In this document: positions 3,062 to 61,153 of the stretch, one piece after another | How the letters are laid out: each line of letters opens with the position of its first letter | Numbering within the stretch: the stretch's first letter is position 1 | IMG/VR virus record: IMGVR_UViG_3300044640_001495 | Coordinates: 1-64,000 of that record | Direction: 5' to 3' (one strand) | DNA: 64,000 nt | Translations under genes and position numbers: made by a program | Notes under the pieces: generated by a model | What the model was told of the DNA's origin: nothing | What the model saw: the letters and a program-made list of their open reading frames with translations, nothing else | Databases searched by the model: none

Positions 3062-3502
3062 ATGAAACAATTTCTATTACTGCTGTTGGCAGTACCTGCA
3101 CTAGCATTTGCACAGGGCAAGATGCCCGCAAAGTCAGCGACCTACGATGCACAGGTTATTAGAGTGAGTGATGGCGATACTATTGTAATCGCCGCTCCCT
3201 TTCTCCCACAGCCACTCAAGCCCGAACTTGCTGTTAGGATCTACGGAGTCGACACGCCAGAAAAAGGACACAGAGCTCAATGTCCACAAGAAGACCAACG
3301 AGCGCAATTGGCGAGTAAATTTACAACTCAAGCCTTACAATCCCACCCAAAGCACCAGGTTATTATCTATGGATGGGATAAGTTTGGTGGCCGTATATTG
3401 GGAGACATCTTGGTAAACGGACAAAGCATTAGACAGGGACTTATCAGCAATGGCTTGGCCCGTGAATACTACGGTGAAGCCAAACAAAGCTGGTGTAATT
3501 AA
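3062..3502 (+). CDS. thermonuclease (staphylococcal nuclease-like) with signal peptide
   Basis: RVSDGDTI, RIYGVDTPE and DKFGGRILG motifs; hydrophobic N-terminus; GGAG RBS. Confidence 0.9.
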   Translation: MKQFLLLLLAVPALAFAQGKMPAKSATYDAQVIRVSDGDTIVIAAPFLPQPLKPELAVRIYGVDTPEKGHRAQCPQEDQRAQLASKFTTQALQSHPKHQVIIYGWDKFGGRILGDILVNGQSIRQGLISNGLAREYYGEAKQSWCN

Positions 3503-3514
3503 TTTAGAACAGAA

Positions 3515-3616
3515 CATCTACCTTAGGAACGCTTGCGTTACTTAGATGTGCCCGGCTGCTGGGCAGAACGTTATGGGAGTCGTGCCCCGGAATGGCGTTC
3601 TAAGTGAGCATTTTTT
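3515..3616 (+). ncRNA. candidate structured intergenic RNA (three hairpins plus possible pseudoknot), family unknown
   Basis: Stems catcta/tagatg (containing aacg-CUUG-cgtt), tgcccgg/ctgggca and agaacgttat/atggcgttct, followed by a T-run. Confidence 0.5.
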
Positions 3617-3655
3617 TACGACCCTAGAATAAATACAGTACAGGAGGACACAACC

Positions 3656-3814
3656 ATGAAACAGCGTAAATTATTAATGAAGCTGTACAAGGCTTGCGTC
3701 GACCATGATACTGAAACAGTTTCCGAACTACGTAAAAAAGAGTTCGCTAAGATACGGAAACACAAGGCCGAAGGTAAGTCATTTACACGCAAATGGACTT
3801 TGGTACAGATTTAA
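3656..3814 (+). CDS. small basic hypothetical protein (52 aa; not in ORF track)
   Basis: AGGAGG RBS, ATG..TAA, MKQRKLLMKLYKACVDHD...; ATAAATA at 3629-3635 upstream. Confidence 0.7.
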   Translation: MKQRKLLMKLYKACVDHDTETVSELRKKEFAKIRKHKAEGKSFTRKWTLVQI

Positions 3815-3859
3815 CACAACTGTAACATTACACACAGCCTAGGGCGATAAATATTAGCT

Positions 3860-4744
3860 ATGCTAAAAACTTATCGCTCTATTTTTATATCCGATGTGCA
3901 TTTAGGTACTAGAGATAGTCAAGCTGATAAGTTAAACAACTTTCTCAAACACAACACCTGCGAAACACTCTATATGGTAGGGGACATACTAGATGTATGG
4001 CGCATACAACAAAACAAATGGCGTTGGAAGCAATCACACACCAATGTTGTAAGACGTATACTTGGACATGCCAAACGTGGCACACGAGTAATCTACGTAG
4101 CAGGCAATCACGATGAATTCTTAAGACCATTAATGCCCTACGGTATTAACTTTGGCAATGTGGAAGTGGTTAATCAATTTGAACATGTTGGGGTAGACGG
4201 CAAACACTATCTAGTCACCCACGGCGACCTGTTTGACGGCATTACCCGACTGGCACCGTGGTTGGCATTCTTAGGTGATAAGGCCTATGACTTTATTCTA
4301 TCTGCCAACAGCAAGTTCAATTGGCTACGACATCGTATGGGTTTTGGCTATTGGAGTTTGAGCAAGTATCTTAAAGCCCGTGTTAAGAAAGCAGTAGACT
4401 TTATATTTCAGTTTGAACGGAATCTAATGGCCTACTGTAAGAAACGCGGCTTTGACGGTGTCATATGCGGACACATACATCACGCAGAGATCAAAGAGAT
4501 AGATGGCATTACGTATATGAATGACGGCGACTGGGTTGAATCGTGTACAGCACTTGTAGAGCACCACGATGGTAAGTGGGAAATCATAACTTGGACTAAG
4601 GAGCGAGACGATGTGGATACTGATACTAATAGCGGTTCACGTGAACAATCCTCAAGACGTTCCGGGAAGAATAGAACTAGCATTCAAAGATCAAGCCAGT
4701 TGCGAGATGACCCTAGCGTCGATGAAGTGGCAGCTAAAGTTTAA
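3860..4744 (+). CDS. plcP: PlcP-like / LpxH-family metallophosphoesterase (putative phospholipase C)
   Basis: SDVHLG, VGDILDVW, GNHD, HGDLFD, GHIH and GDWVESCTA motifs, plus the amphipathic WLAFLGD..YWSLS segment typical of PlcP. Confidence 0.7.
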   Translation: MLKTYRSIFISDVHLGTRDSQADKLNNFLKHNTCETLYMVGDILDVWRIQQNKWRWKQSHTNVVRRILGHAKRGTRVIYVAGNHDEFLRPLMPYGINFGNVEVVNQFEHVGVDGKHYLVTHGDLFDGITRLAPWLAFLGDKAYDFILSANSKFNWLRHRMGFGYWSLSKYLKARVKKAVDFIFQFERNLMAYCKKRGFDGVICGHIHHAEIKEIDGITYMNDGDWVESCTALVEHHDGKWEIITWTKERDDVDTDTNSGSREQSSRRSGKNRTSIQRSSQLRDDPSVDEVAAKV

Positions 4745-17324: not shown

Positions 17325-19658
17325 ATGGAAATAACAGTAATCAAAAGAAATGGTGATCGAGAGCCACTCACCATTGAGAAATGGCAGGCACAGGTGGCAA
17401 AAGTATGTAGCGGTATTGCAGATGTTAGCCAAAGCATGATCGAGATCAAAGCACAGCCACATTTTTATGACGGCATAACCACAAGAGAAGTAGATGAAAT
17501 CACTCTAAGAGCCATTGTGGATCTCATAGACGTTGAAAACAATCCCGACGTTGGTCATACCAATTATCAGTATGTAGCAGGCAAACAGCGAGTTAGCATG
17601 TTGCGTAAAGATGTTTACGGTAGCTACACTCCCCCTAGTCTATATGAAATAGTCAAGACAAATGTGGCCACCGGTCTGTACACGCCAGACCTACTTGTGT
17701 GGTACACAGAAGATGACTGGAACAAGATGAATGACATGTTGGATCATGAAAAGGATGAAACATATTCATATGCTGCCATTGAGCAATTGATAGAAAAGTA
17801 TCTAGTTAAAAATCGTAGTACAAAACAAACATACGAAACTCCACAAATTAGATATATGGTTGCAGCCGCTACTGTTTTTCATAAAGAAGAACCTAATGCA
17901 TCACGTATGCGTTATATCAAGGAATACTACAATGCAGCCTCCGATGGTCTATTTACTCTTGCTACTCCTGTCCTTGCTGGTCTCGGTACCCCTACTAAAC
18001 AATTCAGTTCGTGCGTACTTATTCGCAGTGATGATGACTTGGATAGTATTTTTGCTTCAGGTGAAATGATGGCCAAGTATGCCAGCAAACGTGCAGGCAT
18101 TGGTTTAGAAATTGGACGACTACGTCCATTAGGCAGTCCCATCCGTGGTGGTGAGATTATGCACACAGGTATGATACCCTTCTTGAAGAAGTGGTTTGGT
18201 GACCTGCGTAGTTGCAGTCAAGGAGGTATTCGTAATGCAAGTGCTACTGTTTTTTATCCTATTTGGCATCATCAGTTTGATGATCTTATTGTTCTTAAGA
18301 ACAACCAAGGAACAGAAGAAACCCGAGTCCGTCATATGGATTATGGGGTTGTGCTTAGTGCCTTCTTCTGGAGACGATTCAAAAACAAAGAAGACATAAC
18401 CTTCTTTGATCCCAACGAAGTACCTGACCTATACGAAGCGTTTTACAAAGACACTGAGTTGTTTGAAGAACTCTATGTCAAGTACGAAAAACAAAAAGGC
18501 CTCCGTAAGAAAACGATGAGTGCCGAAGAAGTGTTCAAGAGTGGTATACTAAAAGAGCGCACAGACACGGGTCGAATATATCTCGTATTCATTGATAATG
18601 TCATGAACCAAGGACCTTTTGATCCTGAGTACCATACGATTTATCAAAGTAACTTGTGCTGTGAGATCCTATTACCCACACGTTCATTTAAGCGATTAGA
18701 CGACGATAGTGGACGCATAGCGTTATGTACACTGGGATCTATCAACTGGGGATCGTTCCGCAATCCAGAGGATATGCGTAGAGCCTGTAGGATTCTACAG
18801 CGTAGCCTGTGTAACATTCTTGACTATCAAGATTTCTTGTCGATACAGAGTAAACTTAGTAACGACGAGATACAACCACTAGGTATTGGTGTTACAAATC
18901 TTGCCTACTGGCATGCCAAGCGTGGACTCAAGTATGGCGAGAAAGATGCACTACAGGATGTTAAAACCTGGATGGAGCACCAAGCGTTCTACTTAACAGA
19001 AGCCACAGTTGAATTAGCCAAAGAACGTGGCCCGTGTACAGAGAGTCATAAAACTAGATATGGACAAGGCGTCTTTCCCTGGGAACTTCGTGCCAAGGGT
19101 GTTAATGAACTGGCAGACTTCGCTCCTGAACTTGATTGGGAAACACTACGTGGTAATATGAAGCAGTACGGTGTGCGTAATGCCACATTGATGGCCATTG
19201 CCCCTGTTGAAAGTTCAAGTGTTGTTATTAACTCAACCAATGGCATTGAAATGCCCATGAGCCTAATATCAGTTAAAGAATCAAAGGCAGGATCATTTGT
19301 ACAGGTTGTTCCTGAATACCATAAACTAAAAAACAAATATCAAATGATGTGGGAACAGAAAGACTGTGATGGCTATTTGAAAACAGCCGCAGTTCTTGCT
19401 GCCTATGTTGATCAATCAATTTCAACTAACACATTCTACAATCCAGCACACTGGGCAGATCGTAAAGTGCCTACTACATTGATTGCTAAAAATTTGATGC
19501 AGGCGCACATGTGGGGATTGAAAACATTCTACTACAGCCTGATTAATAAGGCAGGTAGCAAAGCAATGGCCGAAGCAACTCCCGAAGTACACTACAACGG
19601 GTTCCATAACGAAAGAGAAGTAATCGAAGACGAAGACTGCGAGGCATGTAAATTATGA
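17325..19658 (+). CDS. nrdA: ribonucleoside-diphosphate reductase class Ia alpha subunit with ATP cone
   Basis: VIKRNG ATP cone, QFSSC, SNLCCEI, TFYYS and C-terminal CEACKL. Confidence 0.97.
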   Translation: MEITVIKRNGDREPLTIEKWQAQVAKVCSGIADVSQSMIEIKAQPHFYDGITTREVDEITLRAIVDLIDVENNPDVGHTNYQYVAGKQRVSMLRKDVYGSYTPPSLYEIVKTNVATGLYTPDLLVWYTEDDWNKMNDMLDHEKDETYSYAAIEQLIEKYLVKNRSTKQTYETPQIRYMVAAATVFHKEEPNASRMRYIKEYYNAASDGLFTLATPVLAGLGTPTKQFSSCVLIRSDDDLDSIFASGEMMAKYASKRAGIGLEIGRLRPLGSPIRGGEIMHTGMIPFLKKWFGDLRSCSQGGIRNASATVFYPIWHHQFDDLIVLKNNQGTEETRVRHMDYGVVLSAFFWRRFKNKEDITFFDPNEVPDLYEAFYKDTELFEELYVKYEKQKGLRKKTMSAEEVFKSGILKERTDTGRIYLVFIDNVMNQGPFDPEYHTIYQSNLCCEILLPTRSFKRLDDDSGRIALCTLGSINWGSFRNPEDMRRACRILQRSLCNILDYQDFLSIQSKLSNDEIQPLGIGVTNLAYWHAKRGLKYGEKDALQDVKTWMEHQAFYLTEATVELAKERGPCTESHKTRYGQGVFPWELRAKGVNELADFAPELDWETLRGNMKQYGVRNATLMAIAPVESSSVVINSTNGIEMPMSLISVKESKAGSFVQVVPEYHKLKNKYQMMWEQKDCDGYLKTAAVLAAYVDQSISTNTFYNPAHWADRKVPTTLIAKNLMQAHMWGLKTFYYSLINKAGSKAMAEATPEVHYNGFHNEREVIEDEDCEACKL

Positions 19659-20755
19659 GCAAACAACAATATAACCTAACCACAAAAACAGACTATCTCA
19701 ATCGCAAGATGTTTCTGGATCCAGCAGGGCCAGTGACCATTCAACGCTTTGAAGAAGTAAAATATAAAAAGATTGCAGACTTTGATTCAACTGCCCGAGG
19801 ATTCTTTTGGCAACCAGAAGAGATTAGTTTGACTAAAGATTCGAACGATTTTAAAGATGCCAGCGATGCTGTCAAACATATCTTCACTAGCAACCTACTT
19901 CGTCAAACAGCACTGGATAGTTTGCAAGGTCGTGGACCAACACAGGTATTTACTCCGGTGTGTAGTCTCCCTGAAGTAGAAGCACTTATGTACAACTGGG
20001 GATTCTTTGAAACAAATATTCACAGTAAGAGTTACAGCCATATTATTCGTAACATTTACAATGTACCCAAGGATGTGTTCAACACCATCCATGACACTCG
20101 AGAAATTGTAGACATGGCCAGTTCGGTAGGCAACTACTATGACAAGCTACACGTTATTAACTGCCGTAAAGAACTTGGACAAGAGGTTACTGAGAAAGAA
20201 CACGTTAAGGCTGTTTGGTTGGCACTACATGCCAGCTATGCGCTAGAAGCGTTCCGCTTTATGGTTAGCTTTGCCACCAGCTTGGCCATGGTAGAGAATA
20301 AAATCTTTATGGGTAATGGCAACATCATTCAATTGATCTTGCAAGATGAACTCTTACACAAAGGGTGGACTGCTTATATGATCAATCAAGTGGTCAAAGA
20401 GGATGCTCGATTTGTCGAAGCTCGAGAAGAATGCCATGCAGAAGTGTATCAACTTTACATGGATGTTATTCGTGAAGAAAAAGAATGGGCCACCTATTTG
20501 TTCAAGTTAGGTCCTGTTATTGGACTCAATGCCAACATCCTAAAAGATTTTGTAGATTATACCGCAGTGGGCGCATTAAAAGATATTGGTATCAAGTATC
20601 TTCAGGCCGCACCAAAATCAACTCCAATTCCGTGGTTCAACAAGCACACAGATACCAGCAAGAAACAAAGTGCTCTACAAGAAACAGAAAGCACAAACTA
20701 TGTTATCGGCGTCATGGGAGAAAATATTGACTATGCTGAATTGCCGGCTATATAA
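19655..20755 (+). CDS. nrdB: ribonucleoside-diphosphate reductase class Ia beta subunit
   Basis: FWQPEEISL, ETNIHSKSY, LEAFRF and DELLH di-iron motifs; QETESTNY tail. Confidence 0.97.
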   Translation: MSKQQYNLTTKTDYLNRKMFLDPAGPVTIQRFEEVKYKKIADFDSTARGFFWQPEEISLTKDSNDFKDASDAVKHIFTSNLLRQTALDSLQGRGPTQVFTPVCSLPEVEALMYNWGFFETNIHSKSYSHIIRNIYNVPKDVFNTIHDTREIVDMASSVGNYYDKLHVINCRKELGQEVTEKEHVKAVWLALHASYALEAFRFMVSFATSLAMVENKIFMGNGNIIQLILQDELLHKGWTAYMINQVVKEDARFVEAREECHAEVYQLYMDVIREEKEWATYLFKLGPVIGLNANILKDFVDYTAVGALKDIGIKYLQAAPKSTPIPWFNKHTDTSKKQSALQETESTNYVIGVMGENIDYAELPAI

Positions 20756-24703: not shown

Positions 24704-24907
24704 ATGGTAACAGGAAAAGTAAAATGGTTTAACGACGCCAAAGGTTTTGGATTCATTACTCCGGACGATGGTGGCGCAGACTTATTTGCTCACTTTTCAC
24801 AGATTAATTCGAGTGGCTTCAAGAGCCTACAAGAAGGACAAAGTGTAAGGTTTGAAGTGACTCAGGGTCAAAAAGGCGAGCAGGCTAGTAATATTCAAGC
24901 TGCCTAA
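24704..24907 (+). CDS. cspA: cold-shock protein
   Basis: [17 protein letters not shown] (RNP1) and LFAHFS (RNP2). Confidence 0.95.
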
Positions 24908-24910
24908 AAA

Positions 24911-25270
24911 ATTGTTGTAGAAGTCTTAAAGTAAGGCATTCTGGACGCGGGTTCGACTCCCGCCAGGTCCACCATAAAGGAGATTAGTATGGATAACGAA
25001 TATAGTGCTCTAGTTGGCTTTATTGTTGTTATCGTAGTATTTGCTCTAGTCCTTTTATGATGGGCCTGCCATGGTTTCGACAGGGTGAGATAGGATAAAG
25101 ATCAACACGTGGGGTCACGTAAAATACAAAAAACGTAAATGCAAACGCAGATACATTCGACTTCAGCGCAATGAGCTTCACTGGAAACACTGTTTCCGGC
25201 AAAAGCAAAGTTGCTCTAGCTGCCTAAAAAACAGCGGTCCGAGGTAGTTATACCTTGTCATCCAAAATAG
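24911..25270 (+). ncRNA. ssrA: circularly permuted (two-piece) tmRNA
   Basis: Acceptor piece ...GGACGCGGGTTCGACTCCCGCCAGGTCCACCA ends at 24974. The coding piece starts GGGCCTG at 25062 and pairs with CAGGTCC, including G3-U70. Tag ORF 25141-25227 encodes ANADTFDFSAMSFTGNTVSGKSKVALAA*. Outer boundaries are approximate. Confidence 0.9.
24989..25060 (+). CDS. 23-aa hydrophobic peptide encoded in the tmRNA intervening segment
   Basis: AAGGAG RBS directly after CCA; MDNEYSALVGFIVVIVVFALVLL*; stop ends 1 nt before the tmRNA 5' end. Confidence 0.55.
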   Translation: MDNEYSALVGFIVVIVVFALVLL

Positions 25271-34555: not shown

Positions 34556-36457
34556 ATGTCTAAGATCATCGGTATCGATTTAGGTACCACAAACTCATGT
34601 GTAGCTGTTATTGAAAACGGCATCCCCAAAGTAATTGAAAATGCAGAAGGTGCTAGAACAACACCTTCAATCGTTGCCTACGGCAAAGATGAAATTCTCG
34701 TAGGTGCTTCAGCAAAACGTCAATCAGTTACTAACCCCAAAAATACAATCTATGCTTCAAAGCGTTTGATTGGACGCAAGTTTAAAGAGGAAGCTGTTCA
34801 AAAGGACATCAACCTTATGCCCTACGAAATCATGGAAGCCAAGAATGGCGATGCATGGGTTCGTGCTAATGGTCAAGAGTTGGCGCCTCCACAAATCTCA
34901 GCAGAAGTTTTGCGTAAGATGAAAAAGACAGCGGAGGATTATCTAGGTCATGAAGTTACTCAAGCAGTTATCACAGTTCCTGCGTACTTTAACGACAGCC
35001 AAAGACAAGCTACTAAAGACGCTGGACAAATCGCAGGCCTGGAGGTACTCCGTATTATTAACGAGCCTACTGCGGCAGCTCTTGCTTATGGCGTTGATAA
35101 AGCTGATAAAAGAGATAGGAAAATTGCTGTTTACGATCTTGGTGGCGGTACATTCGATGTTTCGATCATCGAAATAGCCAACGTAGATGGAGACAAGCAG
35201 ATCGAAGTATTGAGCACAAACGGCGATACATTCCTTGGCGGTGAAGACTTTGACCAACGTATTATGGATTACTTGGTTGAAGAATTCCGCAAGGATCAAG
35301 GTGTTGATCTAACCAAAGATGTACTTGCTCTACAGCGTTTAAAAGAATCTGCTGAGAAGGCAAAAATTGAATTGTCTAGCTCTGCAAGCACAAGTGTTAA
35401 TTTGCCATACATCACAGCAGACGCAAGTGGCCCTAAGCACATGAATATCACTATTAGCCGTAGCAAGTTAGAACAGCTTGTTGACGAGTTAATCACTCGC
35501 TCAATTGAGCCATGTAAAGTTGCCATGAAAGATGCAGGTGTCACAGCCGCTGACATCGATGAAGTTATTCTTGTTGGTGGTATGACACGTATGCCAAAGG
35601 TACAAGAAGCCGTTGAAAAATTATTTGGCAAGGCACCACGTAAGGATGTTAATCCAGACGAAGCTGTTGCCGCAGGTGCCGCAGTACAAGGTGCTGTTCT
35701 CGGTGGCGATCGTACTGATGTGTTGTTGCTAGATGTGACTCCACTGAGTTTGGGTATTGAAACAATGGGCGGTGTGTTTGCAAAGGTTATTCAAAAGAAC
35801 ACAACCATTCCGACTAAGGGACAGCAGACATTCTCAACAGCAGAAGACAATCAACCTGCGGTGACTATCAAGGTATTCCAAGGTGAGCGTGATCTAGTAC
35901 AATACAACAAATTGCTAGGTGAATTCAATCTTGAAGGTATTCAACCGCAACGTCGTGGACAGCCGCAAATCGAAGTTACATTTGATATTGATGCTAACGG
36001 TATCATGAATATCTCGGCCAAGGACAAGAGCACAGGCAAAGAAAACAAGATCACTATTAAATCAGATAGCGGTCTAAGCAAAGAAGAAATTGAACGCATG
36101 GTACGTGAAGCTGAAGAAAATGCAGAGAGTGATCAAAAAGCTCGAACATTAATTGATGCTCGCAACCAAGCTGAAGCAACTGTACATGAAGTTAAAAAAG
36201 ATCTTGAAGAATTTAAAGATGAATTAACTGATACAGAAAAGACAGAAATCGAGACAGCAGTTAAATCAGTCGAAGACGCTATGAAAGAAGATGACGCTGA
36301 TAAAATTAAAGCTGAACTCGAAAAAGTTTTTCCGGCAATGAAAACATTGTTGGAGAAAAAGCAGGCCAAGGAACAGGCAGCTCAGGCGCCTCAACCAGAA
36401 GCCAAAGCAGATGACAATGTGGTAGACGCTACGTTTACAGAAACTAAGTCTAGCTAA
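34556..36457 (+). CDS. dnaK: Hsp70 chaperone DnaK
   Basis: [26 protein letters not shown] and VTFDIDANG motifs. Confidence 0.98.
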
Positions 36458-40790: not shown

Positions 40791-42026
40791 ATGAAACAAA
40801 CACTATTATCCCTGGCCGTTGTAGCAGTATTGAGTGGGTGCGCATCAAGTTCGGCTATCAAAGAAAAAATAACTGGAAACCAGTTTGACGAACCGAAAGT
40901 CGAGTCTAGTAAATTTCTAAAGAAAGACTCTAATAAATTACAACCACCAGAAGGCGGACCGTTAACAGTGGCAGTGTATGGATTTAGAGATCTAACAGGG
41001 CAACGTAAAAGCCAGCCACTGATTGCGTCATTAAGTTCAGCTGTTACACAAGGTGCTGAAAACTATCTAATCAAGGCCCTACAGGATGTAGGTGATCAAC
41101 GCTGGTTCACAGTACTAGAACGTGTTGGCCTAGAGAACTTGATCAAAGAACGTCAAATGATTCGTCAAATGCGTGAGCAATACCAAGGCCGTGATGCCAA
41201 GATGTTGCCCCCAATGATGTTTGCCGGGATCATCATGGAAGGTGGCATTGTTGGCTACGATAGCAATACACTAACAGGCGGTAGTGGAGTAAGACTGTTT
41301 GGTATTGGGGCAAGCACACAATACCAATCAGACACTGTGACAGTTACCTTAAGAACAGTGAGCGTGTCTACAGGCGAAATTTTAACAACTGTGACAGTAA
41401 CTAAAACAGTGTTAAGTTATATGGACAAAGTGACATTATTGCGATTTGTTGGAGATGGCACAACTTTAGGTGCAAATGCAAATGCATTAGAGGGTGAGAT
41501 CGGCGGCAGCATAAATGAAAGTATCAACAAGGCAATCGACGTAGCTGTACAGGCAGCAGTGATTCAAACTATTAATGAAGGTGCTCGTAAAGGACACTGG
41601 GCATTTAAAAGCAATAAAGTAAGTTCTCCGGTTGCCGTTATTCCGGCGATACCTGCACCAGTAGTAATACCTGCACCAGTAGTAATACCTGCACCAGTAG
41701 TAATATCAGTACCAGTAGTAGAGGAGAAGAAAGATGTCGTGGTTCAATCACAAGCCAAACCCGAAACCAAAACCGAAGCCGTATCCAGTGCCCCCGCAGA
41801 AATAAAGAAAGAAGTTGTACCGGTTGAAAAACTTTCAGGTGAGATGATTTTAAAGGAAGCTTCTTACATTTATAAAGAGCCCGACCTAACAAGTCAAAAA
41901 ACTTGGCAGTTTAAGAAAGGTGCTTTAGTTACAATTATAGGACAAGAGGGTGATTGGGTAGCAGTCAGTGACTCACAAAAACGAAAAGGATTTGTTAATA
42001 AGGATGTACTGGTTAACAAACCTTAA
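40791..42026 (+). CDS. csgG: curli secretion channel CsgG-like lipoprotein with C-terminal Pro/Val linker and SH3-like domain
   Basis: LSG-C lipobox; VAVYGFRDLTGQRK, SSAVTQGA, LERVGLENLIKERQMIR, EGGIVGYD and VTVTLRTVSV.TGEI. Confidence 0.9.
   Translation: MKQTLLSLAVVAVLSGCASSSAIKEKITGNQFDEPKVESSKFLKKDSNKLQPPEGGPLTVAVYGFRDLTGQRKSQPLIASLSSAVTQGAENYLIKALQDVGDQRWFTVLERVGLENLIKERQMIRQMREQYQGRDAKMLPPMMFAGIIMEGGIVGYDSNTLTGGSGVRLFGIGASTQYQSDTVTVTLRTVSVSTGEILTTVTVTKTVLSYMDKVTLLRFVGDGTTLGANANALEGEIGGSINESINKAIDVAVQAAVIQTINEGARKGHWAFKSNKVSSPVAVIPAIPAPVVIPAPVVIPAPVVISVPVVEEKKDVVVQSQAKPETKTEAVSSAPAEIKKEVVPVEKLSGEMILKEASYIYKEPDLTSQKTWQFKKGALVTIIGQEGDWVAVSDSQKRKGFVNKDVLVNKP
41649..41720 (+). repeat. 18-bp coding tandem repeat (IPAPVV x3 plus one degenerate unit)
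   Basis: atacctgcaccagtagta x3, then atatcagtaccagtagta. Confidence 0.9.
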
Positions 42027-45802: not shown

Positions 45803-47845
45803 ATGCTGAAAAAAATCCTAACTAGTCCTTGGACTGCCCTATTAACATTGGCACTTATTGTAAGTATAAGAATCGCCGATCCTGTCTTTGTAGAAAGTGT
45901 AAGACTACGCTACTTTGACACACTGATTACTAATAAAACTCCAACTGCCAATAACATCTATACGGTAAACATAGATGAAGCAGCATTGGACAAATATGGC
46001 CAGTGGCCTTTACCAAGGGCAGAGTATGCAAAAATTATTAAAGATCTTTATGATCGTGGTGCTGGCCTTGTTGTGCTCAATGTTATCATGGCTGAGCCTG
46101 ATCGCACTGGTGGCGATGCTGTTCTCGCAACGGCCCTAAAACAATATCCAGTTGTAATGGGCAGCGTACCATCACAAAAAACTAAGAACTCTCCTCGCAA
46201 TCCAGGTAGTGCTGTACTAGGTCCAGAGTGGCAGGATCAAATTGTACAATACCCGGGACTTATTGCCAATGTACCTCAGTTAGAAAATGCAGCAGCAGGC
46301 ATTGGTATCGTTAGTACACTGCCAGAAGTAGACGGTGTTAATCGACGACTGCCCCTAGTTGTATCCGTTGATGGTAAATTATATCCCAGTATGTCTATGG
46401 AAGCACTTAGAGTCGCAGCTGGTGATTCAACCTTCCAAGTCAAGCTCAATGAAAATGGTGTTGAGAAAATGCGCATACCCAAGTTTGGTCCTATTACAAC
46501 AGATGCGTTAGGTCGTGTATGGATCGATTGGAGTCAAGAAAACCAACAGGCGAGTCTTTTGGACTTGCCCAAAAACTTTAATGGTGCTATAGTTATAGTA
46601 GGTCCAACAGCCGCAGGCATTGCTAATCCTTTGCCTACAGCTAAAGGTGCAGTGTGGCCGCAGGATGTACAAGCGGCAGCAATGGCAACTATGATCAACG
46701 GAGTGGTAATTCAACGTCCCGACTATGCCGACGGAGTTGAAATCCTAGCATTACTAGTATTCGGCATATTGTTAATTTTCTTATCGAGGTGGACTTATGT
46801 TGGAATTGGTTCTGCTGTGGTTATTGTTGGTGCCGTCGTTCCTGGTACTATGTACGCTTTCAGTAATTGGCTCATCCTATCAGATGCGACTGCAATCACG
46901 TTTGGGCTTGTTATCGTTGCTCTTCATACTTATGGCGTTAAATTTGTAAGCGAGTTCTTACAGAAGCAGGCCATAAAGAAACAGTTTGCGGGTTATTGCT
47001 CTAAAGAAGTTGTAGAGCTACTACAAAAAGATCCAGACTTAATCAAGCGTGGTGTACGCAAAGATGTATCAGTTATGTTCAGTGACCTGCGTGGCTTTAC
47101 TCCTATTGGTGAACACTATGGTGATGATGTAGGCGGACTAGGCAAGTATATGAACGGCTACATGGATGCTATCAGTCGTCCTATCATGAACAACAACGGC
47201 ATGATATTAAAGTATGTAGGTGATGCGAGTATGCACATACATGGTGCTCCTATCGAAGACACCAATCATGCTAGAACTATTGTTGCTGTTGGCCTAGAGA
47301 TGCTGGATGCTGTTGACGAATACACAAAACTGATGGAAGCACAAGGATTACCACCTGCCGCAATGGGTTGGGGTTGCAATACTGGTATTGGCTTTATTGG
47401 CGAGATGGGATCAACTGACAGACACGGTTATGACATCTTAGGTGATATGGTGTCAACCGCGGCACGACTAGAAGCACGTTGTAAGGCCTATGGTGTACTA
47501 TGTATTATTGGTGCTGAAACATACAATCGTACCAAAGACGACTTCTTTTATCTAATGATAGATAACTTACAGCCTAAAGGAAAAACTGTGGCAGACTTGA
47601 TCTATACAGTATTACGTACTAAGGGTGCAGACTACACTAGAGATAAGATAGCACACGAAGTGATGCATGACTTGTACCGACAGAAAAAGTTTGACGAAGC
47701 TGCCGCTATGTGTGCAAAGCTAAAGGGCAACTTTGGTGGACAAATGGACAAGTACTACAAAATCTGGATCGAGCGTTGCGACTTTATGAAACTGCAAGAT
47801 CTAGGCGACAACTGGAACGGCGAGTTTGTTGCTCACGAGAAGTAA
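45803..47845 (+). CDS. CHASE2 sensor plus class III adenylate/guanylate cyclase
   Basis: VNIDEAALDKYGQWP.PR and EVDGVNRRLPL CHASE2 motifs; three TM helices; VMFSDLRGFT, LKYVGD and GDMVSTAARLE. Confidence 0.92.
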   Translation: MLKKILTSPWTALLTLALIVSIRIADPVFVESVRLRYFDTLITNKTPTANNIYTVNIDEAALDKYGQWPLPRAEYAKIIKDLYDRGAGLVVLNVIMAEPDRTGGDAVLATALKQYPVVMGSVPSQKTKNSPRNPGSAVLGPEWQDQIVQYPGLIANVPQLENAAAGIGIVSTLPEVDGVNRRLPLVVSVDGKLYPSMSMEALRVAAGDSTFQVKLNENGVEKMRIPKFGPITTDALGRVWIDWSQENQQASLLDLPKNFNGAIVIVGPTAAGIANPLPTAKGAVWPQDVQAAAMATMINGVVIQRPDYADGVEILALLVFGILLIFLSRWTYVGIGSAVVIVGAVVPGTMYAFSNWLILSDATAITFGLVIVALHTYGVKFVSEFLQKQAIKKQFAGYCSKEVVELLQKDPDLIKRGVRKDVSVMFSDLRGFTPIGEHYGDDVGGLGKYMNGYMDAISRPIMNNNGMILKYVGDASMHIHGAPIEDTNHARTIVAVGLEMLDAVDEYTKLMEAQGLPPAAMGWGCNTGIGFIGEMGSTDRHGYDILGDMVSTAARLEARCKAYGVLCIIGAETYNRTKDDFFYLMIDNLQPKGKTVADLIYTVLRTKGADYTRDKIAHEVMHDLYRQKKFDEAAAMCAKLKGNFGGQMDKYYKIWIERCDFMKLQDLGDNWNGEFVAHEK

Positions 47846-58124: not shown

Positions 58125-58213
58125 GGACGAGTGCGCTGAATTGGTTGAAGGCAACGGACTGTAAATCCGCCACATAAGAAACATTGTAGGTTCGACTCCT
58201 ACCTCGTCCACCA
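58125..58213 (+). tRNA. tRNA-Tyr(GTA)
   Basis: Acceptor ggacgag/ctcgtcc, loop CT-GTA-AA, long variable arm, CCA. Confidence 0.9.
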
Positions 58214-58222
58214 AACGAATGG

Positions 58223-58251
58223 TTGACTTTTTTTTGGATTGGTGTTATACT
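58223..58251 (+). promoter_or_regulatory. sigma70-type promoter
   Basis: TTGACT-N17-TATACT. Confidence 0.75.
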
Positions 58252-58281
58252 ATTAATACTGTGAACTTAAAAGGAAATCAA

Positions 58282-58476
58282 ATGCAATCGTATCGTGTTT
58301 ATGTTGAAGTGGGTTCGTATGCAGGTGAAGGTACCAGCGGTGCTTTTCAAACTGAGAGCCTTCGACAATTTGAAACTGTAGTAAATGCCCAGACATCCGG
58401 AGATGCTGTGCGTATAGCAGAAGCCCAATATGGTGGCCAAGAACGGTGCCGTGTCACGTTCCGCGGCGTTGCTTAA
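58282..58476 (+). CDS. small hypothetical protein within the tRNA array
   Basis: AAGGA RBS; own promoter; 64 aa. Confidence 0.6.
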   Translation: MQSYRVYVEVGSYAGEGTSGAFQTESLRQFETVVNAQTSGDAVRIAEAQYGGQERCRVTFRGVA

Positions 58477-58484
58477 CAATTTTA

Positions 58485-58559
58485 GGTCTGTTCGTATAGA
58501 GGTTATTACTGCGGATTGTCTATCCGCTTACGGGGGTTCGATTCCCCCACAGACCGCCA
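58485..58559 (+). tRNA. tRNA-Asp(GTC)
   Basis: gcgga-TT GTC TA-tccgc; T-loop TTCGATT; CCA. Confidence 0.92.
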
Positions 58560-58566
58560 AGTTTAT

Positions 58567-58643
58567 TCCTCGGTAGCACAGTTGGTAGTTGCGCGGCACT
58601 GTTAATGCCGATGTCGGAAGTTCGAGCCTTCCCCGGGGAGCCA
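58567..58643 (+). tRNA. tRNA-Asn(GTT)
   Basis: cggca-CT GTT AA-tgccg; CCA. Confidence 0.92.
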
Positions 58644-58648
58644 ATAAT

Positions 58649-58724
58649 GTATCCTTAGCTCAATTGGCAGAGCGCTGGTCTCCAAAACCAGAGGTTCGCG
58701 GTTCGAGGCCGTGAGGGTACGCCA
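58649..58724 (+). tRNA. tRNA-Trp(CCA)
   Basis: ctggt-CT CCA AA-accag; CCA. Confidence 0.92.
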
Positions 58725-58732
58725 AGTTTTAT

Positions 58733-58807
58733 GGACCGTTCGTCTATCGGTTAGGACACTAGGTTTTCATCCTGGTAAGAGGGGTTCGACTCCCCTACGG
58801 TCTTCCA
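58733..58807 (+). tRNA. tRNA-Glu(TTC)
   Basis: ctagg-TT TTC AT-cctgg; CCA. Confidence 0.92.
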
Positions 58808-58814
58808 AATTTAT

Positions 58815-58892
58815 GTGGCGGTGGCAGAGAGGCCCATTGCAACGGATTGCAAATCCGTAAAATCGTGAGTTCAAATCTCACCCGCCACTCCA
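58815..58892 (+). tRNA. tRNA-Cys(GCA)
   Basis: acgga-TT GCA AA-tccgt; U73; CCA. Confidence 0.9.
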
Positions 58893-58942
58893 AACATGGC
58901 TCCACTCGTTCGACATAGTCGATGCTGTGGAGTTTTTCTTTT

Positions 58943-59023
58943 GCCCCGGTAGACAAATTGGCAAAGTCGTCTCTCTCAAAAAGAGAAATTTAAATGCGGG
59001 TTCAACTCCCGCCCGGGGTACCA
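58943..59023 (+). tRNA. tRNA-Leu(CAA)
   Basis: tctct-CT CAA AA-agaga; small variable arm; CCA. Confidence 0.88.
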
Positions 59024-59028
59024 ATCAT

Positions 59029-59118
59029 GGAAGTATGGCTGAGCATGGCTTAAGGCAGCAGTCTTGAAAACTGAAGGCTCGAAAGGGTCCGTGGGTTCGA
59101 ATCCTACTACTTCCGCCA
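59029..59118 (+). tRNA. tRNA-Ser(TGA)
   Basis: cagt-CT TGA AA-actg; long variable arm; G73; CCA. Confidence 0.9.
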
Positions 59119-59240
59119 ACTATGGACGAATCATTTGAGCAGTGTTAGATGCACACGGGTTACCTTTCCTAACCGCCAAGTGGCGTACCCCTGCCGAATG
59201 ACCTGGGCGTGGCAGTGATAATGATTCGTCCGCCTAATAC

Positions 59241-59315
59241 AGCCTATTAGCTCAGTGGTAGAGCACCGTCTTGATAAGGCGGGGGTCCTTGGATCGTTCC
59301 CAAGATAGGCTACCA
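59241..59315 (+). tRNA. tRNA-Ile(GAT) with non-canonical T-loop ATCGTTC
   Basis: ccgtc-TT GAT AA-ggcgg; acceptor agcctat/ataggct; CCA. Confidence 0.88.
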
Positions 59316-59337
59316 ATTTTTTAAAAGGAGATCTGTC

Positions 59338-59382
59338 ATGACTAGTGACAAGAGTGATAAGATAACGGGGGTGAAACTTTAA
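59338..59382 (+). CDS. 14-aa mini-ORF overlapping the 5' end of tRNA-Lys
   Basis: AAGGAG RBS; MTSDKSDKITGVKL*. Confidence 0.35.
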   Translation: MTSDKSDKITGVKL

Positions 59383-59440
59383 GGTGAAGTAACTGGCTTT
59401 TAACCAGTAAAACTCGGATCGTTCCCGAGCACCCCTACCA
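59367..59440 (+). tRNA. tRNA-Lys(TTT) with non-canonical T-loop ATCGTTC
   Basis: actgg-CT TTT AA-ccagt; CCA. Confidence 0.85.
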
Positions 59441-59521
59441 TATAAAAACACATTAGGCCTGGTCATAGACCATCGCGGGTATAGTGCCTTCCGTGCCGCG
59501 GACTTGAGTGTGTTTTTATAT

Positions 59522-59597
59522 GGTAATATAGCATAGTGGCTAATGCAGTTGCTTCATACGCAGCCTATCGTTGGTTCGAGTCCAACTATTACCACCA
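59522..59597 (+). tRNA. tRNA with CAT anticodon (elongator Met or lysidine-Ile2)
   Basis: gttgc-TT CAT AC-gcagc; paired G1-C72, so not initiator-like; CCA. Confidence 0.88.
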
Positions 59598-59603
59598 AGT
59601 TGT

Positions 59604-59677
59604 TGGGGGTTAGTTAAATGGTATAACCGCGGATTTTGATTCCGCTATTAAAGGTTCGATTCCTTTACCCTCTGCCA
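59604..59677 (+). tRNA. tRNA-Gln(TTG)
   Basis: gcgga-TT TTG AT-tccgc; U1-U72 mismatch; CCA. Confidence 0.88.
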
Positions 59678-59685
59678 AAAAATAA

Positions 59686-59760
59686 CGGTCCTTAGTTCAA
59701 TGGATAGAATGCTTGGCTTCGAACCAAGCGGTGTGGGTTCGATTCCTGCAGGACCGGCCA
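59686..59760 (+). tRNA. tRNA-Arg(TCG)
   Basis: cttgg-CT TCG AA-ccaag; CCA. Confidence 0.9.
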
Positions 59761-59761
59761 A

Positions 59762-60436
59762 CTAGATAATAGTAGATAGTTCAGCAGGAGTTAACTTAGG
59801 TGGCTCTGGAAAAGGACGTGGATCAGAAAACCCAACTGTTGTTGGTCCGTTGTTTACCGTTTCTCTTACTCGAGAGTCATTGGGTTGGCCAACAGATAGA
59901 AACACAATGGGCCATTCATTTTCTGCAAGACCTAAAATCTTGTGAGCTTGGTCTTCGAAAAAGCATGATGTAAAGGCAGTACGATATCCTAGAGATTCTG
60001 CTTGTATCATAGAAAAACTAGCAGCAATCATTGTATCTTTTTCAGAACGTGTTCGAACAGTATATTGTGTTTTAGGATCAGCAGATCTAGAAGATACATT
60101 TATTCCTTGTTCACGTACTGTAGTACCATTAGAAACAAGACCTAGGTCAAAGTTGTCTAAGATAGGAACTCCTATCCATGCTAACAGTAAAGGTGATTGG
60201 GCTGTTAGTAAATGTTTACGAATTGGCATGTTAATGAAACTGTCTAAGAACAGTTTATTTTTTAATTCAAGAGCTTTGTGGCTTTGAGTTAATGCAATAA
60301 CACGCCAAGGATATGCACGTTGCTTACTAGGGGCTGAACAACCAGCTGTTAGTATTGAGTCAATATGCTCTTGAGGTATAGCGTCATTAGTAAATGCTCG
60401 CTGTGTTCGTCGATTTAAAAAGATGTCTAACATCAA
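59762..60436 (-). CDS. nitroreductase-family flavoprotein inserted antisense in the tRNA array
   Basis: NRRTQRAF, I..IL.AG..APS...AYPW, MIQAESLGYRTAF and FLSVG. Confidence 0.8.
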   Translation of the reverse strand: MMLDIFLNRRTQRAFTNDAIPQEHIDSILTAGCSAPSKQRAYPWRVIALTQSHKALELKNKLFLDSFINMPIRKHLLTAQSPLLLAWIGVPILDNFDLGLVSNGTTVREQGINVSSRSADPKTQYTVRTRSEKDTMIAASFSMIQAESLGYRTAFTSCFFEDQAHKILGLAENEWPIVFLSVGQPNDSRVRETVNNGPTTVGFSDPRPFPEPPKLTPAELSTII

Positions 60437-60447
60437 GTATTTATTTT

Positions 60448-60521
60448 ATCGCTGTAGTGAAAAGATATCACAAGACCCTGCGAAGGTCTAAGTCCACGTT
60501 CAACTCGTGGCAGCGATACCA
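60448..60521 (+). tRNA. tRNA-Arg(GCG)
   Basis: agacc-CT GCG AA-ggtct; acceptor atcgctg/cagcgat; D-loop lacks GG; CCA. Confidence 0.82.
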
Positions 60522-60591
60522 AAATTAGTAAAATTCTATTACGTAAGATCCAAGCAAAGTGCAAGGATTGGCCATAACAAGGAGATATAAA

Positions 60592-60798
60592 ATGAAACCT
60601 ATTACTTTTAAAAATCGTTTAAACAACGAACGAGTAGTCTGTGAAGATTCTCGTCAAACTCAGAATATAGATGGCGTTGAGTATCTCTTGGTTCATCGCC
60701 CTGACAATCAACGACAGTTCCTTATGCGTAAGGATGTGTTAGAAAAAGTTAATGGTGTTGGTAGTGTAGTGGCTGCACGGCTGTCTGTGAAACAGTAA
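60592..60798 (+). CDS. small hypothetical protein whose C-terminus is read through tRNA-His
   Basis: AAGGAG RBS; MKPITFKNRLNNERVVCED...; stop lies inside the tRNA. Confidence 0.6.
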   Translation: MKPITFKNRLNNERVVCEDSRQTQNIDGVEYLLVHRPDNQRQFLMRKDVLEKVNGVGSVVAARLSVKQ

Positions 60799-60827
60799 GA
60801 GAGAGTTCGATTCTCCCCTTCACCCCA
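60754..60827 (+). tRNA. tRNA-His(GTG), atypical (two U-U pairs in acceptor stem)
   Basis: gctgt-CT GTG AA-acagt; G-1/C73; CCA. Confidence 0.72.
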
Positions 60828-60829
60828 AT

Positions 60830-60905
60830 GCCGCTTTAGCTGATGTGGTCATAGCACCGGTTTGAAGAACCGAGGAACTAGGTTCGATCCCTAGAGGCGG
60901 CACCA
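60830..60905 (+). tRNA. tRNA-Phe(GAA)
   Basis: cggt-TT GAA GA-accg; CCA. Confidence 0.88.
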
Positions 60906-60911
60906 AGATAT

Positions 60912-60995
60912 GTGAGCGTGGTGGAATGGTATACACAGCAGACTTAAAATCTGCCGCCTTCGGGATTGAGGGTTCAAGTCCCTCCGCTCATACCA
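60912..60995 (+). tRNA. tRNA-Leu(TAA)
   Basis: gcaga-CT TAA AA-tctgc; variable arm; CCA. Confidence 0.92.
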
Positions 60996-61002
60996 AATAA
61001 AT

Positions 61003-61094
61003 GCCAGCGAGACTTGGTAGTCAGAGAGGTTTTATAAACCTTTTAGCGCCAGATTAGCGTTCTTGAGAGGGTTCGATTCCCTCCGCTGGTACCA
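61003..61094 (+). tRNA. tRNA-Ile(TAT) with long variable arm
   Basis: gaggt-TT TAT AA-acctt; variable arm agcgc-cagatta-gcgtt; acceptor gccagcg/cgctggt; A73; CCA. Confidence 0.8.
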
Positions 61095-61124
61095 AATTAT
61101 TTTATAAGTTTTTTCATAAAGTTG

Positions 61125-61153
61125 TTGACACACAGGTGATTAGACTATATAAT
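61125..61153 (+). promoter_or_regulatory. sigma70-type promoter inside the tRNA array
   Basis: TTGACA-N17-TATAAT. Confidence 0.85.

What the first reader, a model, noticed from the sequence alone, without database searches (positions are those of the whole stretch)
3515..3616. Compact GC-rich three-hairpin RNA with possible pseudoknot between a nuclease gene and a small late ORF
Seen: stems 3515-3520/3543-3548 (enclosing aacg-CUUG-cgtt), 3549-3555/3559-3565 and 3565-3574/3592-3601. CUUAG (3522-3526) is complementary to CUAAG (3600-3604), and a T7 tract follows. This is more structure than a plain terminator needs in AT-rich DNA. I could not match it to a hammerhead, twister, pistol, hatchet or HDV consensus. 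Inference: an sRNA, ribozyme or riboswitch of unknown class.
Basis: partly seen in the sequence, partly recalled or inferred. Interest (0 to 1): 0.6.

Follow-up and report, generated by a model that had tools for sequence, protein, structure and literature searches.

The report
New pseudoknotted RNA of jumbo phages
The flagged 100 bases are one member of a large, previously uncatalogued family of folded RNAs, present once per genome in a group of about 350-kb freshwater phages; its shape is proven by evolution but its job is still open.

Summary
The three hairpins exist at 3514-3601. Alone they fold no better than shuffled sequence (z = -0.8), and no Rfam 15 family matches. However, more than 170 distinct homologues were recovered from IMG/VR, metagenome and mis-binned MAG contigs. 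About 88-91% of stem positions pair, against 66-79% in shuffles and about 40% with slid partners, and 20-26 pairs carry compensatory double changes.

The real one joins the invariant P2 loop GCUGCU (3555-3560) to the tail AGU(G)AGC (3603-3609). One of its pairs switches C-G to G-C in 31 distinct members, with one exception.

The invariant parts are the loop CCUUAGGA, the loop GGCUGCU and the tail AAGUGAGC. P1a and the tip of P3 are variable or optional.

The element is on the sense strand and occurs once per contig, including in every near-complete genome tested. It starts a few bases after an upstream stop codon and is often followed directly by a promoter-like site. Its neighbouring genes vary, so a classical riboswitch or a plain terminator is unlikely.

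My best reading (about 0.35) is a 3'-UTR RNA domain that is retained or released as a stable RNA and acts through its invariant loops. A ribozyme remains possible.

The parts
3062..3502 (+). Upstream gene: secreted SNase-like nuclease, 146 aa. Its stop codon TAA is at 3500-3502, 11 nt before P1.
   Evidence: Pfam PF00565, E = 1.4e-9; phrog_452 endonuclease.
3505..3513 (+). Purine-rich 5' flank (UAGAACAGA) holding a stop triplet. The family consensus is UAAGAA.
   Evidence: A or G dominate positions -7 to -1 before P1. A stop triplet lies within 12 nt 5' of P1 in 72 of 88 members, against 43% background.
3514..3519 (+). P1, 5' strand (ACAUCU). It pairs with 3544-3549.
   Evidence: All 6 pairs show double changes and 77.7% of cells pair in A4; 5 of 6 pairs show double changes in A2.
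3520..3528 (+). Invariant asymmetric loop A-CCUUAGG-A. In minimal members it is the terminal loop of P1.
   Evidence: Identical in all members found by protein-anchored, unbiased loci. It is a hairpin loop in L407, L412 and L414. The only variant found is CCUCAGG, in 7 members of one clade.
3528..3539 (+). P1a, an optional apical hairpin (AACG-CUUG-CGUU).
   Evidence: Variable in sequence and length, and absent in L407, L412 and L414.
3544..3549 (+). P1, 3' strand (AGAUGU). It abuts P2 with no linker.
3550..3564 (+). P2 hairpin: GCCC 3550-3553 with GGGC 3561-3564, and the invariant 7-nt loop GGCUGCU 3554-3560.
   Evidence: 99% of cells pair. Three of four pairs switch between G-C, C-G and A-U. 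RNAalifold recovers it on the MAFFT alignment.
3565..3601 (+). P3 hairpin. Outer stem 3565-3574 with 3592-3601, inner stem GGG 3575-3577 with CCC 3586-3588, loop AGUCGUGC 3578-3585, bulge GGA 3589-3591. This is the subtype A tip.
   Evidence: All 10 outer pairs and all 3 inner pairs show double changes. The tip falls into at least five exchangeable subtypes.
3602..3609 (+). Invariant 3' tail AAGUGAGC. Bases 3603-3605 and 3607-3609 pair with the P2 loop 3560-3555 to form the pseudoknot; G3606 is bulged.
   Evidence: The pair 3556:3608 is C-G in 68, G-C in 31 and other in 1 of 100 aligned members. In the whole viral collection, loop C-to-G variants carry tail GUGACC in 31 of 32 distinct members, and no genuine member has a wild-type loop with a mutated tail G. 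L110 carries AGCAGC, a perfect complement of GCUGCU.
3610..3617 (+). A followed by a U7 tract. In the family this is an A/U-rich, G-free stretch of about 6 nt.
   Evidence: Position frequencies. A U run of 4 or more occurs in only 44 of 135 members.
3629..3658 (+). ATAAATA word (3629-3635, like a T4 late promoter), SD AGGAGG (3642-3647) and ATG (3656) of the 52-aa ORF 3656-3814.
   Evidence: Read from the sequence. ATAAATA or TATAAAT lies 0-19 nt after the element in 25 of 133 relatives, against 1.2% background.

Best explanation
SHOWN. Bases 3514-3609 encode, on the + (sense) strand, one member of a phage-specific family of 80-120-nt structured RNAs.
- It has three contiguous hairpins (P1, P2, P3) with no linkers, locked by an H-type pseudoknot between the P2 loop GCUGCU and the 3' tail AGU(G)AGC.
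- Three segments are essentially invariant: CCUUAGGA (the P1 loop or bulge), GGCUGCU and AAGUGAGC.
- P1a and the tip of P3 are optional or exchangeable.
- There is one copy per genome. It sits in an accessory-gene island, begins a few bases after the stop codon of whatever gene lies upstream, and is often followed at once by a promoter-like site.

INFERRED (about 0.35). The element is made as the 3'-terminal domain of the upstream gene's transcript, because no promoter of its own is conserved. The compact pseudoknotted fold next to the A/U-rich tract defines or protects that 3' end. A discrete stable RNA of about 100 nt would then persist, and it would act through its exposed invariant loop CCUUAGGA, which contains an SD-like UAGGA and is a CCUNAGG quasi-palindrome, by binding a protein or another RNA. 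It is not a sensor for the gene that follows it.
For: Structure:
- In A2 (MAFFT, 42 sequences) 90.7% of cells pair, against 79.4% shuffled and 32-44% slid. 20 pairs have double changes, and 0 of 500 shuffles reach this.
- In A3 and A4 (100 sequences each) 88-89% pair, against 66% shuffled. 26 pairs have double changes.
- RNAalifold independently recovers P2 and P3.

Strand: 150 G-U pairs against 25 A-C in the stems.

Pseudoknot.

Copy number:
- One hit in each of 100 loci, in two separate sets.
- One hit in the window's own 353-kb genome.
- Present in 9 of 10 large related records, including all 6 that are at least 90% complete.

3'-UTR position:
- In 49 of 91 members the upstream stop codon ends within -3 to +10 nt of P1.
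- The upstream sequence beyond about -12 is not conserved.
- A sigma70-like site lies within 45 nt downstream in 33 of 133 members, against 3% background.
- ATAAATA lies downstream in 25 of 133, against 1.2%.
- In 19 loci the promoter and SD of the 87-aa gene start 10-20 nt after the tail.
- A canonical terminator follows the element in L082, L124 and L101.

Neighbours: flanking gene families are many and varied. The flanking genes are co-oriented with the element, 110 of 117 upstream and 100 of 119 downstream.
Against: - There are no expression data.
- In about 15 loci a BPL_N/GATase-like gene starts 15-16 nt after the tail with no room for a promoter. There the element lies inside an mRNA leader.
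- A U run of 4 or more follows the tail in only 44 of 135 members, so termination at the element cannot be universal.
- No partner protein or target RNA was identified.
- A structure that merely protects a 3' end would not need 23 invariant unpaired bases or single-copy status. Those features fit a ribozyme or an aptamer equally well.
Confidence: 0.35

Rival explanations
1. A new class of small self-cleaving, or otherwise catalytic, RNA that processes the polycistronic transcript at the border of the accessory-gene island.
For: - Compact size, a pseudoknot, about 23 invariant unpaired nucleotides, and optional or exchangeable peripheral stems.
- Strand-specific and co-oriented with the flanking genes, but with no fixed gene partner. 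This profile is typical of twister, pistol and hatchet (established knowledge).
- No known family matches.
Against: - No match to any Rfam ribozyme model in eleven diverse members at E up to 10.
- Known small ribozymes are usually multi-copy or patchy. This element is single-copy and present in every near-complete genome tested.
- No candidate cleavage site can be named from the sequence.
Confidence: 0.17
2. A translation-initiation element. The folded domain recruits or positions ribosomes, for instance through the SD-like UAGGA in its invariant loop as in the split RBS of T4 genes 38 and 25, for the SD-less gene that starts just after the tail.
For: - An ORF of 40 aa or more starts within 30 nt of the tail in 49 of 133 loci, and 47 of those lack an SD.
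- Among ATG-start ORFs of 80 aa or more, SD frequency is 3 of 34 just after the element against 273 of 723 elsewhere.
- The GATase-like genes start at a fixed 15-16 nt from the tail.
- The linker is A/U-rich and G-free.
Against: - In at least 40% of loci a promoter-like site lies between the element and the next start, so the element is not on that mRNA.
- In the window the next ORF is 46 nt away and has its own AGGAGG.
- SD-less starts are common in these phages anyway, about 62% by a crude count.
- Some of the close 'starts' are miscalled first ATGs.
Confidence: 0.12
3. A riboswitch-like or protein-operated cis-regulator, or a put/EAR-type antiterminator, acting on transcription or translation of the downstream genes up to the DNA polymerase module.
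For: - An aptamer-like architecture whose pseudoknot 3' strand abuts a U-rich tract.
- In 74 of 120 pattern-found contigs the element lies 0.4-5 kb upstream of the family-B DNA polymerase on the same strand.
Against: - The immediate downstream gene is not constant.
- The 87-aa gene and polB have their own promoter after the element.
- In the window's genome polB (139336-141996) is 135 kb away.
- No conserved alternative (terminator or anti-terminator) pairing was seen.
- No Rfam riboswitch or EAR match.
Confidence: 0.1
4. A plain intrinsic terminator or generic stabilising stem-loops at the end of the nuclease gene.
For: - The position directly after a stop codon, and the U7 tract in the window.
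- A/U-rich 3' flanks across the family.
- Promoters often follow the element.
Against: - The consensus scan finds no + strand terminator here.
- P3 ends 9 nt before the U tract.
- The U tract is not conserved.
- Three relatives carry a separate canonical terminator after the element.
- A generic terminator would not be single-copy, nor keep 23 invariant unpaired bases and a covarying pseudoknot over more than 170 distinct sequences.
Confidence: 0.05
5. A single-stranded-DNA structure, such as an origin or primosome-type signal near the replication genes, rather than an RNA.
For: - One copy per genome.
- Frequent proximity to polB.
- CCTTAGG fits the DNA palindrome CCTNAGG.
- Covariation alone cannot tell RNA from ssDNA.
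Against: - It always has the orientation of the surrounding genes.
- The G-U to A-C ratio is 6:1, as expected for the sense transcript.
- It is not near polB in the window's genome.
- Cumulative GC skew shows no turning point at 3.5 kb.
Confidence: 0.04

Closest known systems
H-type (hairpin-loop to 3'-tail) pseudoknot aptamers with an embedded hairpin, e.g. preQ1-II, preQ1-III and SAM-II riboswitches
   Same: A hairpin loop pairs with a 3' tail. An extra hairpin (here P3) is inserted between the two pseudoknot strands. Unpaired nucleotides are invariant, and the pseudoknot 3' strand lies next to the start region of the following gene in some loci.
   Different: There is no sequence or model match and no constant downstream gene. 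The element often lies upstream of the next promoter. There is an additional P1 domain carrying CCUUAGGA.
Pistol and other small self-cleaving ribozymes found by comparative genomics in phage and metagenome DNA
   Same: Size of 50-120 nt, a 6-bp loop pseudoknot, a few invariant nucleotides, variable peripheral stems, and no fixed gene association.
   Different: The order of helices differs. In pistol the pseudoknot partner lies before P3, whereas here it lies after P3. Rfam models do not match. The element is a single-copy core feature. Catalysis is untested.
Phage T4 gene 32 mRNA leader pseudoknot and the split ribosome-binding sites of T4 genes 38 and 25
   Same: A T4-like phage background (family-B polymerase phrog_262, ATAAATA words). 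A pseudoknot is followed by an unstructured A/U-rich stretch that runs into a start codon.
   Different: The T4 elements are about 30 nt long and tied to one gene. This one is about 100 nt, has three hairpins, and precedes many unrelated genes or a promoter.
Processive antitermination RNAs (HK022 put, Bacillus EAR)
   Same: Single or few copies, cis-encoded, acting whatever the next gene is, located ahead of long gene sets. EAR also contains a pseudoknot.
   Different: Those RNAs sit just downstream of a promoter. Here no promoter precedes the element, and one often follows it. There is no Rfam match.
Candidate structured RNAs (csRNAs) predicted from IMG/VR by Fremin, Bhatt and Kyrpides 2023 (PMC10690425)
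   Same: The same data source (IMG/VR) and the same kind of evidence (covariation). Their 10,006 predictions may well include this motif.
   Different: I could not check this, because no supplementary files are held. The paper's text describes tRNA-like, terminator, GP20 and GP32 classes, not this architecture.

Membership tests
Any Rfam 15 family (4227 models) | cmscan score at or above the family's gathering threshold | tested here: not met
   Nothing at 3400-3750 at gathering threshold. At E up to 10 there are only two chance-level hits, 6A at 17 bits and OppA at 8 bits. Ten diverse relatives gave no hit on the element at E up to 10.
Intrinsic (Rho-independent) terminator | A G+C-rich hairpin followed within 0-2 nt by a U tract | tested here: not met
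   No + strand terminator in the consensus scan. P3 ends at 3601 and the U7 run starts at 3611. Only the pseudoknot helix abuts the U tract.
Intrinsic (Rho-independent) terminator | The U tract is conserved across homologues | tested here: not met
   A U run of 4 or more in 44 of 135 members. Three relatives carry a separate canonical terminator 10 nt after the element.
Riboswitch | Conserved aptamer-like fold with invariant unpaired nucleotides | tested here: met
   and the invariant blocks.
Riboswitch | Lies in the 5' leader of a recurrent, functionally coherent set of genes | tested here: not met
   Dozens of unrelated flanking gene families. A promoter-like site lies between the element and the next gene in many loci.
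Riboswitch | Binds a small-molecule ligand, with a structural switch | not testable with these tools
   Needs in-line probing or ITC.
Small self-cleaving ribozymes (hammerhead, twister, twister-sister, pistol, hatchet, HDV-like) | Match to the class consensus or covariance model | tested here: not met
   The helix order also differs from the pistol and HDV topologies (my own comparison from memory, which is a lead and not a test).
Small self-cleaving ribozymes (any, including a new class) | Site-specific self-cleavage | not testable with these tools
   Needs in-vitro transcription and cleavage assays.
tRNA / tmRNA / tRNA-like | Cloverleaf or tmRNA recognised by ARAGORN or Rfam | tested here: not met
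   ARAGORN finds nothing at 3300-3900. The window's real tRNAs and tmRNA lie elsewhere.
Trans-acting sRNA gene | Own promoter and terminator giving a discrete transcript | tested here: inconclusive
   No conserved promoter upstream. The 3' U-rich tract is only partly conserved.
Repeated intergenic element (REP, PeSL, attC-like) | Several copies per genome | tested here: not met
   One copy in the 353-kb genome by blastn, nhmmer and the covariance model. One per contig in 100 of 100 loci, twice.

The most novel reading that the evidence does not exclude
The family is a new functional class of RNA: a self-cleaving ribozyme, a ligand-binding aptamer, or a ribosome- or polymerase-binding RNA. It would be a single-copy core component of a widespread lineage of about 350-kb freshwater jumbo phages, with CCUUAGGA, GGCUGCU and AAGUGAGC forming its active or binding site.
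Probability: 0.3. Interest if true: 0.85.

Novelty: new variant of a known kind. Interest (0 to 1): 0.62.

Why it matters
Few structured RNAs of large phages are understood beyond tRNAs, tmRNA and introns. This is an orphan RNA with unusually clean evidence. It has more than 170 distinct sequences, covariation in every helix, a pseudoknot proven by a C-G to G-C switch, about 23 invariant unpaired bases, and exactly one copy in every near-complete genome of an abundant freshwater jumbo-phage lineage.

That profile is the one that has preceded the discovery of new ribozyme and riboswitch classes. The family is small enough (a minimal form of about 80 nt) for direct biochemistry and structure determination. 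Even if it turns out to be a 3'-end or stability module, it would be a sequence-specific one of a sort not described for phages. It also marks the border of a hypervariable accessory-gene island, which is useful for annotating these genomes.

Tried and rejected
1. Single-sequence thermodynamics gave z = -0.8 on the + strand and -0.86 on the - strand. This is not informative.
2. Rfam at gathering threshold and at E up to 10, on the window and on ten relatives, gave no family. ARAGORN found nothing.
3. The GenBank phage collection by blastn gave no match.
4. I looked for extra copies in the window's own genome by blastn, nhmmer, an HMM, the covariance model and regular expressions, and found none.
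6. A closing helix P0 between the A-rich 5' flank and the U-rich 3' flank was tested. Real pairs are no better than permuted pairs (z = -0.2). This test is insensitive for low-complexity flanks, and mean duplex energy is only -1.5 kcal/mol.
7. Variants at loop C3559 or tail G3604 were sought to decide whether AAG pairs with the P2 loop or with CUU of the invariant loop. No genuine variants exist in IMG/VR, so this is undecided.
8. Palindrome covariation in CCUNAGG was sought. Only a central U-to-C change was found, in one clade. Two of those chance rows came from human-gut metagenome assemblies (microbial contigs); they did not match the model and I did not pursue them.
9. Bacterial and archaeal genomes: 58 pattern hits, of which only 3 score with the model. 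The two clear ones (L302, L332) are contigs of this same phage group binned into Bacteroidota MAGs.
10. GC skew as a sign of an origin showed no signal at the element.
I therefore laid no reads and made no further attempt.
12. The supplement of PMC10690425 is not held.
13. The BPL_N/GATase-like gene that often follows the element is absent from the window's genome.

Full report
**What is in the window**

The window is the first 64 kb of a single 353,123-bp virus record with GC 0.41. It is a jumbo phage with 24 tRNA genes, a permuted tmRNA, ribonucleotide reductase, Hsp70 and other auxiliary genes.

The finding lies between a secreted SNase-like nuclease gene (3062-3502) and a 52-aa ORF (3656-3814). 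A metallophosphoesterase gene and a glycosyltransferase gene follow.

- CATCTA 3515-3520 pairs with TAGATG 3543-3548, around AACG-CTTG-CGTT.
- There is a GC-rich middle hairpin.
- AGAACGTTAT 3565-3574 pairs with ATGGCGTTCT 3592-3601.
- CTTAG 3522-3526 is complementary to CTAAG 3600-3604.
- A T7 run lies at 3611-3617.

**Is it more than chance?**

Judged alone, no. The MFE of 3503-3625 is -35 kcal/mol against -32.1 ± 3.6 for dinucleotide shuffles, z = -0.80. The opposite strand is similar. No Rfam 15 family matches at gathering threshold or at E up to 10, ARAGORN finds nothing, and the simple scan sees no + strand terminator. By the first criterion, covarying homologues, it passes decisively.

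**Homologues**

Loci were first anchored on the two flanking proteins, which makes them unbiased with respect to the element. In them, nhmmer found the element in 36 and then 46 loci. It was always on the gene strand, and it stood next to different genes.

That gave 132 distinct sequences of 93-121 nt. Later scans added about 45 more.

In 596 Gb of bacterial and archaeal genomes only 3 of 58 pattern hits score with the covariance model. The two clear ones carry this phage group's DNA polymerase at 75% identity, so they are phage contigs binned into MAGs. The family is therefore phage-specific as far as these collections show.

**Secondary structure**

On a plain MAFFT alignment of 42 subtype-A members (A2), the structure I derived from the window gives:
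- 90.7% paired cells, against 79.4% after shuffling partners and 32-44% with partners slid by 1-3 columns;
- 20 pairs with changes on both sides;
- 0 of 500 shuffles reaching any of the five measures.

RNAalifold on the same alignment recovers P2 and P3 on its own.

I built a covariance model, R1, from A2. Two sets of 100 distinct sequences covering all subtypes were aligned to it. These alignments lean towards the model's structure. They give:
- 88-89% paired, against 66% shuffled and about 37% slid;
- 26 pairs with double changes.

In the stems there are 150 G-U pairs against 25 A-C. The folded strand is therefore the + strand, which is the sense transcript.

**Anatomy in window coordinates**

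| Part | Coordinates | Notes |
|---|---|---|
| P1 | 3514-3519 with 3544-3549 | |
| Invariant loop A-CCUUAGG-A | 3520-3528 | Asymmetric loop |
| P1a | 3528-3539 | Optional. Absent in L407, L412 and L414, where CCUUAGGA becomes a hairpin loop |
| P2 | 3550-3553 with 3561-3564 | Invariant 7-nt loop GGCUGCU |
| P3 | 3565-3574 with 3592-3601, plus 3575-3577 with 3586-3588 | The tip falls into at least five exchangeable subtypes |
| Invariant tail AAGUGAGC | 3602-3609 | |

The three hairpins follow each other without linkers.

**The pseudoknot**

Instead the P2 loop 5'-GCUGCU (3555-3560) can pair with 5'-AGU-G-AGC (3603-3609), leaving one bulged G. Two unbiased members pointed to this:
- L124 has loop GGGUGCU together with tail GUGACC.
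- L110 has tail AGCAGC, which is a perfect complement of the loop.

I then searched the whole viral collection for each half-change.
- Loop C-to-D variants gave 32 genuine distinct members, all C-to-G. Of these, 31 carry the compensating tail GUGACC and one does not.
- A wild-type loop with a mutated tail G gave no genuine member.

The compensated variants occur with subtype A, B and C tips. On alignment A4 the pair reads C-G 68, G-C 31, other 1.

The other five pseudoknot pairs never vary. As a result I cannot decide whether the tail's AAG pairs with the loop's GCU, as in my model, or with CUU of the invariant P1 loop.

**Copy number and position**

The element is single-copy:
- One copy in the window's own genome by blastn, nhmmer and the covariance model.
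- One per contig in 100 of 100 loci, twice.
- Present in 9 of 10 large related records, including all six that are at least 90% complete. One genome has a second, degenerate copy.

On the 5' side:
- The upstream ORF's stop codon ends within -3 to +10 nt of P1 in 49 of 91 analysable loci.
- A stop triplet lies within 12 nt of P1 in 82% of members, against 43% background.
- Nothing further upstream is conserved, so there is no promoter of its own.

On the 3' side:
- The first six bases are A/U-rich and G-free.
- A U run of 4 or more occurs in only a third of members.

What follows the element varies (133 loci with enough downstream sequence):
- A sigma70-like promoter within 45 nt in 33 of 133, against 3% background. 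One search shows the promoter and SD of the 87-aa gene right after the tail.
- An ATAAATA word in 25 of 133, against 1.2% background. The window's is at 3629-3635.
- A canonical terminator in three loci.
- An ORF without an SD within 30 nt in about 47 loci. This includes a BPL_N/GATase-like gene at a fixed 15-16 nt.

Flanking gene families are numerous. In 74 of 120 pattern-found contigs a family-B DNA polymerase lies 0.4-5 kb downstream, with accessory genes inserted in between. In the window's genome that polymerase is 135 kb away. The element thus travels with a hypervariable accessory-gene island.

**Interpretation**

It is established that this is a conserved, pseudoknotted, sense-strand RNA fold under strong selection, unique in each genome, and absent from Rfam.

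The following readings are disfavoured:
- A plain terminator: the U tract is not conserved, some loci have a separate terminator, and the element is single-copy with invariant loops.
- A classical riboswitch: there is no recurrent gene, and a promoter often lies downstream of the element.
- A repeat element.
- A tRNA-like gene.

My best reading, at about 0.35, is this. The element is the 3'-terminal domain of the upstream transcript, and it persists or is released as a stable RNA of about 100 nt. That RNA acts through its exposed invariant loop. The loop contains an SD-like UAGGA and the quasi-palindrome CCUNAGG.

The rivals and their weights are:
- a new self-cleaving ribozyme, 0.17;
- a ribosome-positioning element for the SD-less genes that follow it, 0.12;
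- a riboswitch, operator or antiterminator, 0.10;
- a plain terminator, 0.05;
- an ssDNA signal, 0.04.

**Novelty**

No curated family matches. A 2023 catalogue of 10,006 candidate structured RNAs from IMG/VR (PMC10690425) may already list the motif, but its supplement is not held. I found no description of this architecture or of a function for it.

Noticed in passing
window 24880-25227 and 58125-62195: The phage carries a permuted (two-piece type) tmRNA and a cluster of 24 tRNA genes (Rfam).
   Followed up: no
window 34556-36457, 40791-42026, 45803-47845, 17325-20755: Unusual auxiliary genes for a phage: a full-length Hsp70/DnaK (E = 2e-257), a CsgG-like curli secretion channel with an SH3 domain, a CHASE2 sensor fused to an adenylate/guanylate cyclase, and class I ribonucleotide reductase.
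   Followed up: no
window 3629-3658: ATAAATA (like a T4 late promoter), then AGGAGG, then the ATG of the 52-aa ORF. The same word is 16-fold enriched just after the element in relatives, often only 2-7 nt before an ATG, which would give leaderless or near-leaderless mRNAs.
   Followed up: partly
L164, L173, L194, L209, L221 and others, 56-72 nt after the element: The 87-aa gene (phrog_639/12534) ahead of the DNA polymerase is always preceded by TTGACA or TTGCTT, 17 nt, TGTATAAT, and a strong AGGAG. The TTGCTT forms resemble T4 MotA-box middle promoters.
   Followed up: no
L411:1497-1583 (G006:C1:76937-77019): One complete genome (352,754 bp, direct terminal repeats) holds a second, divergent copy. 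It has CCUUAAA in place of CCUUAGG but keeps an intact GGCUGCU loop and AAGUGAGC tail.
   Followed up: partly
L112:5541-6170, L043:1011-1658 and about 13 others: A BPL_N / class-I glutamine-amidotransferase-like gene of about 210 aa starts 15-16 nt after the element with no Shine-Dalgarno sequence. It is absent from the window's genome.
   Followed up: partly
L302 (Lishizhenia MAG contig) and L332 (Haliscomenobacter MAG, 183-kb contig): These contigs in Bacteroidota MAGs carry the element together with this phage group's 87-aa gene and DNA polymerase (75% identity). They are therefore phage contigs binned with bacteria. The promoters and SD sequences look proteobacterial, and the tmRNA is of the beta-proteobacterial type.
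   Followed up: partly
L420, L421, L423-L427: In one clade the invariant loop reads CCUCAGG. There, CCUC can pair with a downstream GAGG, extending P1 to about 9 bp.
   Followed up: no
L472:4004-4085: A weak model hit (19.7 bits) in a metagenome contig with a GGCUGCU loop, a CCGGGAAU tip and an AAGUGAGC tail but no CCUUAGG. It may be a distant relative.
   Followed up: no
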